Shown piece by piece: positions 27,828-33,643 of a stretch of 64,000 nt of DNA. The stretch's first letter is position 1; every line of letters starts with the position of its first letter. This DNA comes from Rebecca billardiae RCC1528 (lineage: Eukaryota > Protista > Haptophyta): contig OZ251230.1 in the NCBI GenBank assembly GCA_965240325.2, positions 496,001-560,000 on the forward strand, given 5' to 3'. Below the pieces are notes generated by a model. It made no database searches. It had not been told where the DNA came from and saw nothing but the letters and a program-made list of their open reading frames with translations. The position numbers were made by a program, and so were the translations under genes.

Positions 27828-29063
27828 ATGGTCTCAGCAGCCTGCCTAGCGTGCGAGAGCCCAGTCACCGAGCGGGCGGACGTGGGCTGCGCCCACGACC
27901 TGTGCTCGGACTGCGTGCACAGCTGGAACGAGCGGCTGGCGGCGGCGGACAAGCTGGAGGACGTCGAGCACGGGCGCAACGGGGCGGCGACGCTCCTCTG
28001 CCCGATCTGCTGCGCTGGGGGCGGAACGTCGCCCGAGCTCTGCCCCATCTGCCTTGACATCATCGTCGCCCCCCGTGCGAGCAACTGTGGGCACCGCTTC
28101 TGCAGCGTGTGCGCGGACGCGTGGACGGAGCAAACGGGCGCCACGCGGCCGCGCGCGCTCACCGCGCGCTGCCCGATCTGCCGCCAGCTGACTGAGCTGA
28201 CCAACTCGGACCGCTTCTTCTACCCAAGCCGCATGTCCCTCGCCCGCGTGCGCGTGTGCGGCGTCGAGACCGTCGCCTGCCACGACCTCGGCGCCGCGCA
28301 TCACGACATCCGGCACGTGGTCGACCGCGCCTTCCTGCAGGCGCTGCCGCACGGCGACCGGCTGCTCGCCCGGCTGGTCGAGCCCAAGCCGCCGTGCGCG
28401 CGCGTGGGCGGCATCGACGACTGCCCCGTCCTGGGCATGCTGCACGTGCCGCTCGCCCTCGAGCTCTTCGCCCTCGTGGAGCAGCCGCCGCGCGCACATT
28501 CGGTGCGGCTGTCGTGCGTGCTCGTCGCCCAGGTCCTGCCCGTCCCGCTGTTCGTCTCCGCCAAGGGCTCGGCCATCTCGTCGCTTGCATGCGTGGAAGA
28601 CGCGCTGAACATGTGCCAGGGCTGCATCCGGTTCGGGCCGAGCAACGTGCCCGAGGCCTACAGGGCGCACCCTTACTGGTCGCCAGACCGCCCCCCCATG
28701 GTGGGCAGCGCGGCGACCTCTGGCATGGCGGAGGTGCGGACCGCAACCGAGCTGATGGAGCGGGAGATGGGCCGCGCCACGGGCGCCGCGCCGCCGACGG
28801 GGCGGCGCAGGCCGGCCGAGGTGGTGGGCGCAGGCGCCGGCGCGGGCGGCGCGGGCGCGGGCGGGGCGGGGCGCAACACGCCGCCGCCGAAGCGGACGGT
28901 GGTGGCGAATGATGATATGATCGGGATCCGACGGCTTGCCATGGGCGGATCTGCCGGATCTCGAGTCATCGGGCCGATTATCGCCATTTGGCTCATCATC
29001 GCCGACATATTGGTCGCTGACTCGCTGCACAAGTTATGGCACCAGAAAAGTTTAATCATCTAG
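27828..29063 (+). CDS. Protein with two C3HC4 RING fingers; 3' end uncertain
   Basis: CLAC..CAHDLCSDC..CPIC and CPIC..CGHRFCSVC..CPICR. Confidence 0.8.
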   Translation: MVSAACLACESPVTERADVGCAHDLCSDCVHSWNERLAAADKLEDVEHGRNGAATLLCPICCAGGGTSPELCPICLDIIVAPRASNCGHRFCSVCADAWTEQTGATRPRALTARCPICRQLTELTNSDRFFYPSRMSLARVRVCGVETVACHDLGAAHHDIRHVVDRAFLQALPHGDRLLARLVEPKPPCARVGGIDDCPVLGMLHVPLALELFALVEQPPRAHSVRLSCVLVAQVLPVPLFVSAKGSAISSLACVEDALNMCQGCIRFGPSNVPEAYRAHPYWSPDRPPMVGSAATSGMAEVRTATELMEREMGRATGAAPPTGRRRPAEVVGAGAGAGGAGAGGAGRNTPPPKRTVVANDDMIGIRRLAMGGSAGSRVIGPIIAIWLIIADILVADSLHKLWHQKSLII

Positions 29064-29101: not shown

Positions 29102-29216
29102 GGGTGCTTGATGAGATCGACTTGTATGATAGACTAGATGGTCTACCGCACCTGATTGCTCATCAGGTTCGGTAGACCATCTACTCTATCATACAAGTCG
29201 ATCTCATCAAGCACCC
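29102..29216. repeat. 115-bp near-perfect foldback (55-bp arms, 2 mismatches, 5-nt loop); MITE-like or hairpin RNA
   Basis: 29102-29156 is the reverse complement of 29162-29216; flanked by AC on both sides. Confidence 0.95.
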
Positions 29217-29399
29217 ACTGGCCTGCCTAGATAGACCTTGCGGACATCTGGTTGGCGCAGAATGTGCCGGAAGTGGCTCGGCACGAGCCCAGAATTCCAT
29301 AAGTCAAATGATGGACCGAAAGTTTTCCCTTGTACCGATTCGTAGCTTTCAATCGCTACGCACTCGTTGGGGGACCATCTGGGCCGAAGCCGCGACGGC

Positions 29400-31865
29400 A
29401 TGGGGCCCACCTCCGACTCGAGGGCGTCCGCCGCTTCGCACGGCGATACAGTGCCGCTCGCAGCGAGCGACATCACCTCCCGTCTGACCCGCTCCCGTCA
29501 GATCGGGCGCTTTCGAAGGCTCGCCGTCTCTGGCCCCCCGGCGGTTCTTGCCGTGTCGGCGCTTACGGCGGCGTTTGTGCTGCTCTCGCTGTTCCCGCCC
29601 GACACGCCTCCCTTCTTCGTTGGCGCGTTTCTCATCTTCTTCGCGGCTACTTGCTGGTTGCTCGTGCTCTTGCCCACCGACCGTGTGCTGCTCATCTTCA
29701 CGTGTGTTGCAATGGGTGCCGGGTATGCCTGCATGTCCGTAGTAGATGTTGGCATCGCCGCCAATCTCTATCTCGCGGCGTCGAGCGCACGGACGTGCAA
29801 TGCGGCTTACACGATGGACGTCATGGTTCCGTTCTACGCGGGCCTGGCCACTGGATGCGGGCACTTTGCCCTGCGCAGCGGTGCTGTCCTCACCTCTGAG
29901 CTGTGGGCGAGCCGACTCCGGCCTTTGCGCCGCCGATTCGTGCTGCGCCAGTTGTGGCTCGCCCTGAGCGAGTCGGACCTGATTATGGCCGTGTTCATGT
30001 TCTGGTACATCGTGGTCCACATCGTCGCGTTACCTGGCTATCTGGATTCTTTCGACTTCTGGTCCACGCTCGTGCTCATGCTCGAGTCGCTCGCCTCTGC
30101 ATACGTGTGCCGGGCCGTTCGCGTGAGGCAGGGCGTGCACGCGTGGCTTGGCGCGCGCGGCGAAGGCGTGAACGAGGCGGCTGGCCTGGCGTCTCTCATC
30201 TCAGACACGGGCAGTCCCGACGCTTTCATTGCGCACGCCGTGCCTCGCCTGCGCGCGATCCGCGCCGACCTGCTCACGCCCGCCATCTTCAACGCGCCAA
30301 AAATGGCGCCAGGCTCTCCGCCACCCTCTGCGCCGACGAGCCAGCACTCGAGACCTGAGAGCATTCTCGTCCGGACGGCCTCGAGCGCGGACCGGCTCAA
30401 CTTCATGGGCGCTGACGGGGATGACCCTGGGCGCTGGTACCGGCTCTCCGAGCCCGTGGCGCTCTACTCCATCGACGCGTTTGTCAGCCACTCGGTGCGT
30501 GCGAGGCGCCCATTTACGCGCGTCCTGCCTGATGCGAACCCACGCCGTTGGTGGGGCGGCCCCCGACCAACGCCCAGACCGCGTCCTGATGCGTTGGGGT
30601 CTGGGCCCCTAACGCCCAGGCCGCAAGGCACCAGCGCACGTGGCACTGCGAAGCCAACCAGACGGGAGCTGACTGACCACGTCCCGCGCCGCCACTCGCG
30701 CCGTCGCTCGCCCGTGGCCGCGCGGCAGTGGCACGACTCCGGGAGCGCAAAGTGGCACGAGCTGCAGCGCTGGTGCGCCGAGTTCCGCAGCGCGCACCAC
30801 GGGCGCGATCCCCTCCTGTGGATTGACCGCGCGTGCATCGACCAGAGCAACATCGCGACGGACCTCGCGATGCTGCCAGTCGTGATCGCCGCGTCGAGCG
30901 AGCTGCTGGTGCTGTGCGGCCCCTCGCTGCCGACGAGGCTGTGGTGCGTGTTTGAGATCTTCATCAACGCGGTGATGGGTGGGCACAGCCCGCAGCTGCG
31001 CGTCCTCCCCGCGTACGAGCTTCAAGTGCGCGAGGCGATCCGCCGGTTCGACGTTGCGCGCTGCACCGCCTCGACGCGCGGCGACTACGACCGGCTGATG
31101 GCGGTGATCGAGGCCAGCTTTGGAGACACGCGCAGCTTCAACGAGCTCGTGCTGCAGCTCCTGCAGCCGACGGGCCACGGTGAGCTGGGGAAGGCGCTCC
31201 CCACGAGCACGGCTTGGAGTCCGGCCAGCTTCAGCCCGCGCCCGCAACCCAACCGCGGCGGTCGGCTCGGCCGGCAACGGCGCCTGTGGCGCAGCTGGAT
31301 GGCGTGGTGGCTCGTGTACGGCGCGGCCTGGCTCGCGCTCCTCGCAGTGCTGCACGTGGGCGGGCAGCCCGCGAGGCAGGCGTGCGCGCAGTGCTTTGCG
31401 TTCGGCGAGAAGCCGCCCCCGGGCGCGTGGGTCCGGGCAGGCTCGCGCGAGCTCGCGCTCCATGCGCGATACGCGAGTTTTGCGGACGCGCACCGCGCGT
31501 GCAAGGCGGAGGGCGCGACGCTCGCCGTCGTGCGTGAGCCTGAGACCTTGGACGTTGCCCACTGCCTGCTGGGGCACACCACGCCCCTCGCGTGGGTTGG
31601 CCTGTCGCTGGGCGGCGCGCCCATGACCAACGCGTGGGCCTGGGCGGATGGCGTGGCGTTGGCAGCCCCGCCGAGCAACGAGTCTGTCAGCGTGCCGAAT
31701 GGGCAAGGTGACGATGGCGGCGCGGTCGGCGGCGGTGGATGGGTGCCCACGCAGCCACGGGCGTTTGACGGGTACGAGTGCGCCATGCTCATGTCGGGCG
31801 GGTGGGCCACGTGGTGGCCGTGCAAGCGAGCCCTGCCGTTTCTCTGCTCGCGGCCCACTCCTTAG
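29400..31865 (+). CDS. Multi-TM protein with cytoplasmic TIR-like domain, a further TM helix and a C-terminal C-type lectin domain; intron 30495-30728
   Basis: Splicing restores DAFVSHSWHD; LWIDRACIDQ; RLWCVFEIF; CTLD features AHRACKAEGATLA, WVGL, WAWADG, QP, ECA, WPC..LPFLC. Confidence 0.8.
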   Translation: MGPTSDSRASAASHGDTVPLAASDITSRLTRSRQIGRFRRLAVSGPPAVLAVSALTAAFVLLSLFPPDTPPFFVGAFLIFFAATCWLLVLLPTDRVLLIFTCVAMGAGYACMSVVDVGIAANLYLAASSARTCNAAYTMDVMVPFYAGLATGCGHFALRSGAVLTSELWASRLRPLRRRFVLRQLWLALSESDLIMAVFMFWYIVVHIVALPGYLDSFDFWSTLVLMLESLASAYVCRAVRVRQGVHAWLGARGEGVNEAAGLASLISDTGSPDAFIAHAVPRLRAIRADLLTPAIFNAPKMAPGSPPPSAPTSQHSRPESILVRTASSADRLNFMGADGDDPGRWYRLSEPVALYSIDAFVSHSVRARRPFTRVLPDANPRRWWGGPRPTPRPRPDALGSGPLTPRPQGTSARGTAKPTRRELTDHVPRRHSRRRSPVAARQWHDSGSAKWHELQRWCAEFRSAHHGRDPLLWIDRACIDQSNIATDLAMLPVVIAASSELLVLCGPSLPTRLWCVFEIFINAVMGGHSPQLRVLPAYELQVREAIRRFDVARCTASTRGDYDRLMAVIEASFGDTRSFNELVLQLLQPTGHGELGKALPTSTAWSPASFSPRPQPNRGGRLGRQRRLWRSWMAWWLVYGAAWLALLAVLHVGGQPARQACAQCFAFGEKPPPGAWVRAGSRELALHARYASFADAHRACKAEGATLAVVREPETLDVAHCLLGHTTPLAWVGLSLGGAPMTNAWAWADGVALAAPPSNESVSVPNGQGDDGGAVGGGGWVPTQPRAFDGYECAMLMSGGWATWWPCKRALPFLCSRPTP

Positions 31866-32875
31866 AGTGAGTCCGAGCGCGCGATGACTGAAATCTAACA
31901 TGGACATATGGTCGACAGCTCATCATGCACCGGCGCCGCCCACGGCCAGCGGGGTTCTCGCCTGCCTGAGCTGTGTGCGTCTCTTATTCCTAGTAAACTG
32001 TAGCAGCGGCGCGGTGCCACGCGCTGACACGCGGCGCAGGCGCGTCGGTTACACTCGCCAGTCGCCGGGCCGAGTCTGCTAAGTGCGCTACCAGGTATGG
32101 AGTGAGCCTGATGGAGTCGTTCGTTGGAACTTGACGCCGGTTTGGCGCCCGCGCGGCGAGGGCGACAACGGGCGTACACGGGGCCCGCGGCGGCGGGAAG
32201 CGCGCGGGCGCGGCCGAGAACGGCACGGTCCGGACGCCTCTCGTCAGCCGCGGACGCGCACCGCGCCTCCTCCTCGCACGCTGCTAACTTGATCCAGGTT
32301 AAACGGTGGTTTTTGCTGCCGACCAGCTCAAGTTCCACGGCTGGTCAAGGTTCGGCTTGCGACCTCGCCGCTGGTGCTTGCAAGAAGGTACACGAGTTGG
32401 TCGAACTCCCACGCACCCGCTCTGCGCTCGTCGACGCCCTCTGAAGGTGACTCGGGGTGCATGCGGGGCAGTGGGATGCAGTGGTTCGGCGTTGCCTCTG
32501 AGTCGTCCAGCGCGCAGGCCATGTAGCGCGGGTGTGGTGCGCGCATGGCCCGGTAATTCGGTCGCGGCATGTCTGTCTGGGCTGCCCAAGGCCTGCCGCA
32601 CCGCGAAGCGAGCGCTCAGGAGCGTGTGCCGACCGTGCCAGCCCCGCCGAGATGGGGCACTTCGCTGGGAAATGCGGTGTCAAGTTCCAAGCCCCGCCAA
32701 GACGTTCCAACGAACGCTCCATACTTACCGTTGTATCTGCTCCTTTTTTTCACACTGATGAGCTTTGCTCGCTGGTCGCGAGCTCGGTCCGGGTCGCTCG
32801 GCCCGGCCGACGTTTCCGGATGGATGCCTTGCCCAAGGACTTTGGTCCCCTGCGATCGGGACGGCGGCCGCAGCC

Positions 32876-33643
32876 ATGTCCTCCTTCAACCACCAGGTCG
32901 CCTCGAGCGTGCGCCAGAAGAAGAAACAGGTGGGCTCATCGGTGCCGCTCACGGACGAGGAGATCGCGGATGGCGAGTTCCTCGAGGCTGTCGATCGTGG
33001 CGAGCACGAGACGGCGATTGGGATGCTCAAGAAGGGGCAGCAGATCAACGTTGCTGACGAGCGCGGCGAGACGCCAGTGCACAAGGCGACGCGCCGCGGC
33101 GACAAGGAGTTCGTCATGACGCTGCTCAAGCTGGGCGCGGTCGTGGACTACGCGGATGTTGATGGTGTGACGCCCATCATGATCGCCGTGCACTACGGCC
33201 GCGACGATCTCGTCGCCATCTTCATGCAGAAGGGAGTCAACCTGCTGGCAAAGACAAACGAGGGGATGACGCTGCTCCATGCCGCGGTCTACTCGGGGCA
33301 CGAAGCCACGGTGGCCACGCTGCTCCGCGTCGAGGAGGCCGGCGAGCTACTCGAGCAGAAGGACACGAACGGGCGCACGCCCCTGCAGGTCGCGAGCTTC
33401 CGCTCCTCCAAGACCGTGTGCGAGATGCTCGTGGAGGCAGGGGCCAACTACGCGACCAAAGACAAGCGCGGGAACACGTGCGCGACCCTCGCCGAGCGTA
33501 GTGGCCGGCGAAACTCCAAGGACTTCTTCGATCGCCTTGCTATCGACCGCATGGCCGCCGAGCGCGAGGCTGCAGCAGCAGCAAAGCCTGACGAGCAGGC
33601 CGAGGGCGCCGAGGGCGATGCAGCGCCTGAGGCCGATGGCTGA
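32876..33643 (+). CDS. Ankyrin-repeat protein
   Basis: GETPVHKA, GVTPIMIA, GMTLLHAA, GRTPLQVA. Confidence 0.92.
   Translation: MSSFNHQVASSVRQKKKQVGSSVPLTDEEIADGEFLEAVDRGEHETAIGMLKKGQQINVADERGETPVHKATRRGDKEFVMTLLKLGAVVDYADVDGVTPIMIAVHYGRDDLVAIFMQKGVNLLAKTNEGMTLLHAAVYSGHEATVATLLRVEEAGELLEQKDTNGRTPLQVASFRSSKTVCEMLVEAGANYATKDKRGNTCATLAERSGRRNSKDFFDRLAIDRMAAEREAAAAAKPDEQAEGAEGDAAPEADG

What the first reader, a model, noticed from the sequence alone, without database searches (positions are those of the whole stretch)
29400..31865. TM-TIR-like-TM-C-type lectin protein: possible algal pattern-recognition receptor
Seen: about six TM helices, then a domain whose DAFVSHSWHD motif is restored only by removing intron 30495-30728, with LWID..CIDQ and RLWCVFE. 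One more TM helix and a complete C-type-lectin-like domain follow. Established: F.SH...WC..E is the TIR signature, and that Glu is catalytic in NADase TIRs. Inference: the extra helix puts the lectin on the opposite side of the membrane, suggesting glycan-triggered TIR signalling in an architecture unlike animal TLRs.
Basis: partly seen in the sequence, partly recalled or inferred. Interest (0 to 1): 0.7.

Follow-up and report, generated by a model that had tools for sequence, protein, structure and literature searches.

The report
Algal membrane TIR/HET-like lectin-domain protein
This is an intact two-exon gene of a very GC-rich, probably haptophyte alga for a membrane protein with six helices, an internal immune-type TIR/HET-like domain, a seventh helix and an external C-type lectin-like domain; it looks like one member of a large, unstudied algal receptor family, but no ligand, enzyme activity or transcript has been shown.

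Summary
Window 29400-31865 (+) encodes six N-terminal membrane helices, a domain carrying DAFVSHS|WHD, LWIDRACIDQ and RLWCVFE, a seventh helix and a Pfam-significant C-type lectin-like domain (CTLD). The intron 30495-30728 is real: GT..AG ends, flat codon-position GC, a position shared with paralogues whose exons lie in different frames, and seven paralogues with the junction contiguous.

The middle domain has a TIR-type fold. A model of an intronless paralogue (pLDDT 90) ranks only TIR domains first in two structure searches. Its invariant W...E aligns with the TIR WC..EL block. It passes neither Pfam TIR nor Pfam HET and lies between them.

It is one protein. The frame is continuous, four paralogues are single ORFs with the same layout, and so is a 722-aa metagenomic relative. 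The genome holds at least 151 domain matches; 16 have a CTLD downstream.

Positive-inside counts (24 against 3) put the TIR-like domain inside and the CTLD outside.

"Glycan-triggered" is not supported: the CTLD reads QPR/WAT where canonical CTLDs of this genome read EPN/WND.

Multi-TM TIR genes of haptophytes were published in 2025, and UniProt names a relative a TIR protein. This scan already followed up two paralogues of the same architecture on other DNA of this genome (s1-371892, s1-363212). I rate it a new variant of a known kind.

The parts
29400..30494 (+). Exon 1 (365 codons): N-terminus, six-helix membrane block, juxtamembrane segment, and the first strand of the TIR/HET-like domain
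   Evidence: First ATG of the open frame 29367-31865. GC3 0.80 against GC2 0.54. Aligns from residue 25 with residue 25 of the metagenomic relative P0041.
29532..30113 (+). Six-helix membrane block (TM1 aa 45-64, TM2 72-90, TM3 96-120, TM4 138-160, TM5 190-210, TM6 219-238)
   Evidence: Hydropathy peaks. Six long helices at pLDDT of about 85-94 in the model. 23 matches in the own genome, each directly upstream of a TIR/HET-like copy. No Pfam or Atlas relative.
30162..30299 (+). Conserved juxtamembrane helical segment (family consensus AAAxIAxLxG...RFRxV)
   Evidence: A260 and A264 are nearly invariant in 72 full-length relatives. Helices 255-268 and 273-283 at pLDDT of about 89-96.
30474..30494 (+). 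DAFVSHS: strand beta-A of the TIR/HET-like domain, at the end of exon 1
   Evidence: F361 and S365 are invariant. Strand 358-363 packs into the domain in the model. Aligns with the FDAFISYS of a TLR TIR.
30495..30728 (+). Intron (234 nt, GT..AG, in frame, no stop)
   Evidence: Flat GC by codon position. Conserved position in paralogues whose exons are in different frames. Absent from seven paralogues. Its read-through is disordered in the model, pLDDT 35-40.
30729..31190 (+). Main part of the TIR/HET-like domain (WHD ... through the last helices)
   Evidence: At least 151 matches in the own genome. 3,835 clusters in public data. pLDDT 91-96. Fold of the paralogue model matches TIR domains first.
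30819..30845 (+). WIDRACIDQ: strand beta-B and start of the BB-loop region; HET-type motif
   Evidence: W474 and D476 invariant, C479 nearly so. Only this stretch hits Pfam HET, at E 0.02-0.18.
30936..30956 (+). RLWCVFE: start of helix alpha-C, holding the W...E pair (W515, E519)
   Evidence: R513, W515 and E519 invariant in 72 relatives. Aligns with the CWCQYEL of a TLR TIR.
31296..31355 (+). Seventh membrane helix (WMAWWLVYGAAWLALLAVLH)
   Evidence: Hydropathy 1.74. Helix 622-654 in the model. Seven Arg in the 25 residues before it and two Lys/Arg in the 25 after it.
31380..31862 (+). C-type lectin-like domain (Pfam match 31476-31850), non-canonical binding site (QPR, WAT)
   Evidence: Pfam Lectin_C 32.1 bits against a cut-off of 22.6. 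DC-SIGN CRD is the best PDB sequence hit. Core Cys, WVGL and GGW conserved; EPN and WND absent.
31863..31865 (+). Stop codon TAG

Best explanation
The gene encodes one multi-pass membrane protein of a large algal family.

Shown:
- The modules and their order.
- The intron.
- The TIR-type fold of the middle domain.
- Invariance of the W...E pair.
- Recurrence of the architecture.

Inferred, topology:
- The N-terminus is cytosolic.
- Six helices return the chain to the cytosol.
- The TIR/HET-like domain sits in the cytosol.
- The seventh helix takes the chain out.
- The disulfide-bonded C-type lectin-like domain faces the outside, or the lumen of an internal compartment.

Inferred, mechanism, by analogy with TIR and HET proteins:
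- The external domain binds an unknown ligand, probably not by the classical Ca2+-sugar site.
- Ligand-driven clustering brings the cytosolic TIR/HET-like domains together.
- Assembled domains either cleave NAD+ through the invariant Glu, giving a signal or NAD+ loss, or recruit partners.
- The outcome is a defence or cell-death response.

The domain is best called a TIR-superfamily domain intermediate between Pfam TIR_2 and fungal HET.
For: Single protein:
- Continuous frame.
- Four single-ORF paralogues of 791-864 aa with the same order of modules.
- P0041, a single 722-aa ORF homologous over all modules, and P0144.
- 16 of 44 CTLD matches lie just downstream of a domain copy.
- 12 loci have all three modules.

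Fold:
- Model pLDDT 90.4.
- The first 14 Foldseek rows are all TIR, probability 0.99-1.00.
- The first 13 VIA-align rows are all TIR; the best is RPP1 TIR at Z 9.3, 126 residues, 3.4 A.

Sequence:
- 39 of 57 members hit HET, 33 hit TIR_2 and 7 hit TIR weakly; no other family recurs in more than 2.
- The only PDB sequence hits are TIRs, in two collinear blocks.
- The Glu is invariant.

Topology:
- K+R count of 24 inside against 3 outside.

Family context:
- Atlas neighbours are haptophyte clusters, one auto-named TIR.
- UniProt names the relative A0A7S2NLC2 a TIR protein.
- Haptophyte multi-TM TIR genes respond to virus infection (PMC12489294).
- In fungal HET-lectin-fold proteins the lectin fold sets recognition specificity (PMC10890737).
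Against: - No transcript evidence for this gene: no RNA run was listed.
- Nothing here shows enzyme activity, ligand or phenotype.
- The window's domain fails the Pfam thresholds for TIR (no hit) and HET (12.6-15.7 bits against 22.5).
- Structure scores are moderate (TM about 0.5, Z 9.3), and the tool notes that Z 7-8 is common for unclear cases.
- The fold was modelled on a paralogue 41% identical, and on the unspliced read-through, not on the spliced protein.
- The conserved Glu is also kept by non-catalytic animal TLR TIRs (my knowledge).
- How HET domains act is unknown (PMC10890737).
- The CTLD lacks the sugar and Ca2+ residues.
- Its long loop is poorly modelled.
Confidence: 0.72

Rival explanations
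1. Same protein and topology, but the TIR/HET-like domain is a non-catalytic assembly or adaptor module, as in animal TLR and IL-1R TIR domains. It signals by recruiting other proteins, not by cleaving NAD+.
For: The closest sequence-level PDB hits are non-enzymatic receptor TIRs: SIGIRR and TLR15/TLR2. IL-1RAcPb, IL-18Rbeta and MyD88 TIRs score as well as the NADase TIRs. TLR TIRs also keep the WC..EL Glu (alignment; my knowledge).
Against: W and E of W...E are invariant in 72 relatives, together with several polar residues: D13, D22 and D51 in paralogue numbering. That pattern is more typical of an active site. Plant and bacterial NADase TIRs (RUN1, RPP1, SARM1, AbTir, ThsB) are equally high in the fold lists. 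No candidate adaptor partners were identified.
Confidence: 0.2
2. The six-helix block is the effector, not only an anchor. It would be a channel or membrane-perturbing module controlled by the adjacent TIR/HET-like domain, so that sensor, enzyme and effector sit in one chain.
For: The TM block and the domain are a fixed pair: 23 of 23 TM-block matches sit directly upstream of a domain copy, and most public relatives have about 270 N-terminal residues before the domain. A conserved juxtamembrane segment links them. The block is modelled confidently as a compact six-helix bundle.
Against: The block has no detectable relative among known channels or transporters. It was not searched by structure on its own. 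It diverges faster (52% to the closest paralogue) than the domain (71%). The same domain also occurs with soluble partners such as HNOB and TPR.
Confidence: 0.12
3. Two separate genes or transcripts, as in the reader's own refutation case: a TM-TIR-like gene ending near 31190, and a separate TM-CTLD gene starting downstream.
For: No RNA data could be obtained. The linker 31191-31295 is low-complexity and modelled with low confidence. Most family members lack a CTLD.
Against: No stop codon lies between the parts, and GC3 stays at 0.88-0.90 through linker and helix 7. There is no ATG-led ORF for the CTLD part alone in frame after a stop. The same fusion occurs in four single-ORF paralogues and in P0041 and P0144 from other sources. 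16 CTLDs follow a domain copy on the same strand.
Confidence: 0.04
4. A silent or decaying copy of an expanded family, with no function of its own.
For: The family is very large (at least 151 matches), a few copies carry stops, and no expression data are available.
Against: The frame is intact over 821 codons with canonical splice sites. All ten family-invariant residues are kept. Coding GC3 is strong. The closest paralogue is only 52-71% identical, so this is not a recent dead duplicate.
Confidence: 0.06

Closest known systems
Haptophyte membrane TIR-domain genes of Gephyrocapsa (Emiliania) huxleyi (New Phytol 2025, PMC12489294)
   Same: Haptophyte algae. N-terminal 'multiple transmembrane helices' or an extracellular region, followed by a TIR domain with a conserved Glu. 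Found by remote-homology and structure methods. Proposed receptor-like role, and expression that changes during virus infection.
   Different: That paper reports no additional domains on these genes. Here a seventh helix and a C-type lectin-like domain follow the TIR-like domain. I could not check whether their genes belong to this exact sequence family, because the supplements are not held.
Fungal HET domain proteins (Pfam PF06985), especially HET + lectin-fold proteins such as Podospora het-B Bh (PMC10890737)
   Same: Three ordered blocks: beta-A motif, W.D..C..Q, and W..E. Remote TIR homology. Very large, variable, lineage-expanded gene families. A C-terminal lectin-type fold as the variable recognition part.
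   Different: Below the Pfam HET threshold, and no Pfam HET hit in this genome. The fungal proteins are soluble and cytosolic, with a fruiting-body-lectin fold that recognises a protein. This one is a seven-helix membrane protein with a CTLD on the far side of the membrane. Structural similarity to a HET cluster is only TM 0.60.
TIR domains with NADase activity (SARM1, plant RUN1/RPP1/RPS4, bacterial AbTir/ThsB)
   Same: Flavodoxin-like alpha/beta fold. These are the top structural matches. The Glu on alpha-C, within a W...E pair, is invariant.
   Different: 13-18% identity, with no Pfam TIR hit for this protein. The beta-B/BB-loop region carries the HET-type W.D..C..Q motif. Activity is untested.
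Animal Toll-like and IL-1 receptors
   Same: External recognition domain, membrane span and cytosolic TIR-type domain. The beta-A (DAFISYSEHD against DAFVSHSWHD) and WC..EL blocks align.
   Different: The order is reversed and interrupted: six helices, then TIR-like, then one helix, then the ectodomain at the C-terminus. The ectodomain is a CTLD rather than LRR or Ig.
Animal C-type lectin receptors (DC-SIGN/CD209 and relatives)
   Same: CTLD fold, with DC-SIGN CRD the best PDB sequence hit at E 1.7e-4. The extracellular C-terminal CTLD follows a membrane helix, a type II-like orientation for that segment.
   Different: No EPN/QPD or WND motif. The cytosolic part is a TIR/HET-like domain plus a six-helix block instead of ITAM/ITIM-type tails.

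Membership tests
TIR domain superfamily | Flavodoxin-like alpha/beta fold with a central parallel sheet (beta-A to beta-E) and surrounding helices | tested here: met
   Model of the intronless paralogue L034 has pLDDT 90.4. The first 14 Foldseek rows and first 13 VIA-align rows are all TIR, best Z 9.3 over 126 residues. The window's own domain is modelled at pLDDT 91-96, with beta-A supplied by exon 1.
TIR domain superfamily | Match to a Pfam TIR model (PF01582, PF13676) above the curated cut-off | tested here: not met
   No TIR hit for the window's protein. Among 57 relatives, 33 hit TIR_2 and 7 hit TIR weakly, best E 2.9e-5. The one relative whose score was printed, P0159, reaches 21.1 bits against a cut-off of 28.
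TIR domain superfamily | Conserved Glu on helix alpha-C (WC..EL / W...E), catalytic in NADase TIRs | tested here: met
   E519 and W515 are invariant in 72 relatives. HMM alignments place them on the CWCQYEL of the TLR15/TLR2 TIR. In the model the pair lies at the start of the helix after strand beta-C. No residue-level structural superposition was possible.
TIR domain superfamily | NAD+ cleavage or TIR-TIR assembly | not testable with these tools
   Needs biochemistry.
HET domain (Pfam PF06985) | Match to the Pfam HET model above the curated cut-off | tested here: not met
   12.6-15.7 bits against 22.5, covering the WIDRACIDQ block only. 39 of 57 relatives give weak hits, best E 1.3e-3. No HET hit in the whole genome.
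HET domain (Pfam PF06985) | Three ordered conserved blocks, including W.D..C..Q | tested here: met
   DAF.SHSW.D, W.D..C(IDQ) and RLWC..E occur in that order. The IDQ part is variable among paralogues. The block layout of HET itself is taken from my knowledge of the Pfam family.
HET domain (Pfam PF06985) | Induces cell death when expressed or activated | not testable with these tools
   Needs experiments.
C-type lectin-like domain (Pfam PF00059) | Match above the curated cut-off, WIGL motif and four core cysteines | tested here: met
   27-32.1 bits against 22.6. WVGL, C41, C134, C148, C156 and GGW are conserved in alignment A4. DC-SIGN CRD is the best PDB hit.
C-type lectin-like domain (Pfam PF00059) | Ca2+-dependent sugar site (EPN or QPD, plus WND) | tested here: not met
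   The window has QPR and WAT, and its paralogues EPA and WSA/WST. Canonical CTLDs of the same genome (L043, L044) have EPN and WND.
Toll-like receptor architecture | N-terminal LRR ectodomain, one membrane helix, C-terminal TIR | tested here: not met
   The order here is six helices, TIR-like domain, one helix, C-terminal CTLD, with no LRR.

The most novel reading that the evidence does not exclude
This gene family, with roughly 130 loci in one alga and thousands of clusters in marine data, is the haptophyte counterpart of TLR/NLR repertoires. Under this reading they are membrane receptors whose external modules (here a sugar-site-less CTLD) sense viruses or other cells, and whose cytosolic TIR/HET-like domain is an NAD+-cleaving switch. 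Because the domain lies between TIR and HET in sequence, showing its activity would also settle the long-open question of how HET domains kill cells.
Probability: 0.3. Interest if true: 0.8.

Novelty: new variant of a known kind. Interest (0 to 1): 0.55.

Why it matters
- TIR domains drive immunity in bacteria, plants and animals, and fungal HET domains drive cell death by an unknown mechanism. Little is known about immune receptors of the marine microalgae whose blooms are ended by viruses.
- This gene shows a compact receptor layout: external CTLD, internal TIR/HET-like domain and a fixed six-helix partner.
- The layout recurs at least 12-16 times in one genome and appears in environmental data.
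- It gives concrete candidates for algal surface sensors.
- It also gives a tractable, sequence-intermediate domain for testing whether HET-type domains are NADases.
- The value lies in the family as a whole. This copy is one ordinary member of it.

Tried and rejected
- RNA evidence: the look-up of sequencing runs listed no run.
- Word-based homologue searches were almost blind here, finding 1 and 2 hits. The exhaustive profile search was what revealed the family.
- Pfam on exon 1 and the ESM Atlas feature search on the TM block gave nothing usable.
- The PADLOC defence models gave no hit.
- A1 members alone gave no Pfam hits. The larger set A2 did.
- The supplements of PMC12489294 are not held, so I could not check whether its genes are the same family.
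- One mistyped locus range contained stops and was dropped.
- 'Canonical HET' and 'canonical TIR' were both considered and rejected, because both Pfam thresholds fail.
- 'Classical sugar-binding lectin' was rejected because the motifs are missing.
- 'Retained coding intron' was rejected on codon-position GC and the paralogue comparison.
- The 55-nt palindrome upstream is not a repeat family.
The spliced protein was not searched or folded. I used each exon by reference, the unspliced open frame by reference, and natural intronless paralogues as stand-ins.
Full report
WHAT IS THERE

Window 29367-31865 (+) is one open frame, with the first ATG at 29400 and TAG at 31863. The window is about 68-70% GC. 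It belongs to a 72-Mb assembly of 41 contigs that carries 59 light-harvesting-complex matches, so the organism is a photosynthetic eukaryote. The named relatives of the gene are haptophyte: Pavlovales sp. CCMP2436 and haptophyte-dominated Atlas clusters. I therefore read the organism as a haptophyte-like alga. That is an inference, because the genome itself is unnamed.

THE INTRON

The interval 30495-30728 is 234 nt, in frame and free of stops. The open frame by itself therefore says nothing: 30% of shuffles of the interval stay open. Four things show it is an intron.

- It has GTGCGT...CAG ends.
- Its codon-position GC is flat (0.73/0.76/0.71). The exons have GC3 of 0.80-0.92 well above GC2.
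- Paralogues have an intron of 130-350 nt at the same point, with IDAFVSH(S) before it and W[HS]D after it, often in different frames. The closest paralogue on contig C18 has a 136-nt intron, with exon 1 in frame -1 and exon 2 in frame -2. One copy uses a GC donor.
- Seven paralogues carry the junction contiguously, for example GVDAFVSHSWHDDAEDKW in L005/L034.

In the model of the unspliced frame the intron-coded 78 residues are disordered, at pLDDT 35-40. The DAFVSHS strand from exon 1 packs into the domain encoded by exon 2.

Searches used each exon by reference, the unspliced frame by reference, or natural intronless paralogues. The joined step was left out.

THE MIDDLE DOMAIN

Pfam gives only a sub-threshold HET hit on LWIDRACIDQ (12.6-15.7 bits against a cut-off of 22.5) and no TIR hit.

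A profile of seven intronless paralogue domains (A1) found 3,835 clusters at E <= 1e-3 among 1.84 billion representatives, 766 of them at E <= 1e-30. The domain usually follows about 270 N-terminal residues.

In a 57-sequence alignment (A2), D13, F15, D22, W34, F38, P46, W49, D51, P68, C74, G82, R88, W90 and E94 are invariant. In 72 full-length relatives the window's F361, S365, D446, W474, D476, P493, G507, R513, W515 and E519 are all invariant columns.

AlphaFold2 on A2, with the paralogue L034 as target (41% identical to the window's domain), gave pLDDT 90.4 and pTM 0.86, with a beta-alpha-beta pattern.

- Foldseek against the PDB lists only TIR domains in its first 14 rows: TLR10, RUN1, SPARTA, SARM1, RPP1, RPS4 and AbTir, at E 2e-3 to 7e-3, probability 0.99-1.00 and TM about 0.5.
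- The independent VIA-align search of 48,161 chains lists only TIRs in its first 13 rows. The best is RPP1 TIR at Z 9.3, 126 residues and 3.4 A. The related nucleoside deoxyribosyltransferase, SLOG and DprA folds follow.
- These scores are moderate. The unanimity across two methods is what carries weight.

At sequence level, 39 of the 57 domains hit HET weakly, 33 hit TIR_2 (best E 2.9e-5) and 7 hit TIR. No other family recurs in more than two. The only PDB sequence hits of the profile are TIRs: SIGIRR at E 0.07 and TLR15/TLR2 at E 0.38. They align in two collinear blocks: vDaFishswhD with FDAFISYSEHD, and GptylsRLWcvvElf with SPSFVNSCWCQYELYF. The family's invariant Glu therefore falls on the TIR alpha-C Glu.

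Atlas structure neighbours are, in order:

- haptophyte clusters at TM 0.84-0.91, one auto-named 'TIR domain-containing protein';
- a haptophyte HNOB fusion;
- oomycete and ascomycete TPR fusions;
- a TIR_2 cluster at 0.62;
- a Pfam-HET cluster at 0.60;
- ThsB at 0.53.

UniProt already names one relative a TIR domain-containing protein.

Conclusion: this is a TIR-superfamily domain lying between TIR_2 and HET. It is a member of neither Pfam family by their thresholds.

ONE PROTEIN, RECURRENT ARCHITECTURE

There is no stop between the parts, and GC3 stays at 0.88-0.90 through the linker and helix 7.

- The genome has at least 151 matches to the domain, roughly 130 separate places by my reading of the table.
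- It has 44 CTLD matches. Sixteen of these lie 0.3-2.5 kb downstream of a domain copy on the same strand.
- The six-helix block has 23 matches, every one directly upstream of a domain copy. Twelve loci have all three modules.
- Four paralogues (L013, L014, L015, L018) are single uninterrupted ORFs of 791-864 aa with five or six N-terminal hydrophobic peaks, the domain, one later helix and a CTLD.
- A 722-aa single ORF, P0041, lies on a eukaryote-like metagenome contig. It is homologous over the TM block (27% identity, E 4e-15) and over exon 2 (33%, E 8e-31), and it ends in a Lectin_C domain.
- P0144, P0003 and P0025 also combine the domain with a C-terminal CTLD. P0157 has the CTLD at the N-terminus.
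- MMETSP transcripts exist for family members, though not for a CTLD-bearing one in my sample.
- No RNA run was listed for this gene.

TOPOLOGY

The model gives six long helices (22-64, 70-89, 95-128, 135-172, 178-210, 218-238) and a seventh at 622-654.

With N-in and six spans, the segments predicted inside hold 24 Lys+Arg and those predicted outside hold 3. The CTLD has the four core cysteines plus an N-terminal pair, and one NES sequon. That fits an oxidising, external or lumenal side.

THE LECTIN-LIKE DOMAIN

Pfam Lectin_C passes its cut-off, and DC-SIGN is the best solved relative.

I aligned the domain with the genome's strongest CTLDs, which read GEPND...WND. At those positions the window reads QPR and WAT, its single-ORF paralogues read EPA and WSA/WST, and P0041 reads APR and WSV. 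The classical Ca2+/sugar site is therefore missing. The long loop is also modelled poorly.

'Lectin-like, ligand unknown' is the fair description. 'Glycan-triggered' is not supported.

COMPARISON WITH WHAT IS KNOWN

- A 2025 paper on Gephyrocapsa huxleyi reports TIR genes with multiple N-terminal membrane helices or an ectodomain, and a conserved Glu. Their expression changes during virus infection, and the paper explicitly reports no further domains (PMC12489294).
- Fungal HET domains are remote TIR homologues of unknown mechanism (PMC10197012, PMC4986451). Of Sordariales HET proteins, 5-10% carry a C-terminal lectin fold, which sets recognition specificity in het-B (PMC10890737).
- Arabidopsis PP2-A5 is a soluble TIR-lectin (PMC12355970).
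- I found no description of the six-helix, TIR/HET-like, helix, CTLD layout. The library searched is limited.
- Within this scan, two paralogues with the same layout on other contigs were already followed up, with the same reading (s1-371892, s1-363212). I reached my reading before seeing those notes.

MECHANISM AND CONFIDENCE

Shown:

- the gene structure;
- the modules and their order;
- the TIR-type fold, by prediction;
- the invariant W...E pair;
- the family expansion, with tandem and head-to-head copies;
- faster divergence of the TM block (52% identity) and CTLD (59%) than of the TIR-like domain (71%) against the closest paralogue.

Inferred:

- cytosolic domain and external CTLD;
- ligand-driven clustering;
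- Glu-dependent NAD+ chemistry or TIR-type assembly;
- a defence or cell-death output.

The main rival is a non-catalytic scaffold, because receptor TIRs keep the same Glu. A more speculative reading makes the fixed six-helix partner the effector.

VERDICT

- It is a new variant of a known kind, of moderate interest, mainly as an entry point to a large algal receptor family and to the HET/TIR question.

Noticed in passing
window 29102-29216: A 55-nt inverted repeat (arms 29102-29156 and 29162-29216, 96% complementary, 5-nt loop) lies about 180 nt upstream of the start codon. It is single-copy in the genome, so it is not a MITE family. Function unknown.
   Followed up: partly
P0157 (ENA metagenome protein, 729 aa): This relative has the Lectin_C domain at the N-terminus (aa 36-144) rather than the C-terminus: the same modules in a different order.
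   Followed up: no
ESM Atlas clusters: The same TIR/HET-like domain is fused to a heme-NO-binding (HNOB) domain in a haptophyte cluster, and to TPR/ankyrin repeats in oomycete and ascomycete clusters. It behaves as a mobile output module with many sensor partners.
   Followed up: no
G000:C19:547982-562325: Six tandem units of about 2,569 nt each carry two CTLD matches. This is a separate tandem CTLD gene array, not linked to the TIR/HET-like domain.
   Followed up: no
G000:C12:124893-133596; C14:198755-204208; C11:494017-498078: Family copies sit in tandem or head-to-head clusters. One paralogue (L009) uses a GC donor at the conserved intron.
   Followed up: partly
window 32765-33643 (+) and 27828-29063 (+): The flanking open frames look like an ankyrin-repeat protein downstream and a Cys-rich RING-like protein upstream, judged from the translations only. 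Neither was tested, and nothing links them to the gene.
   Followed up: no
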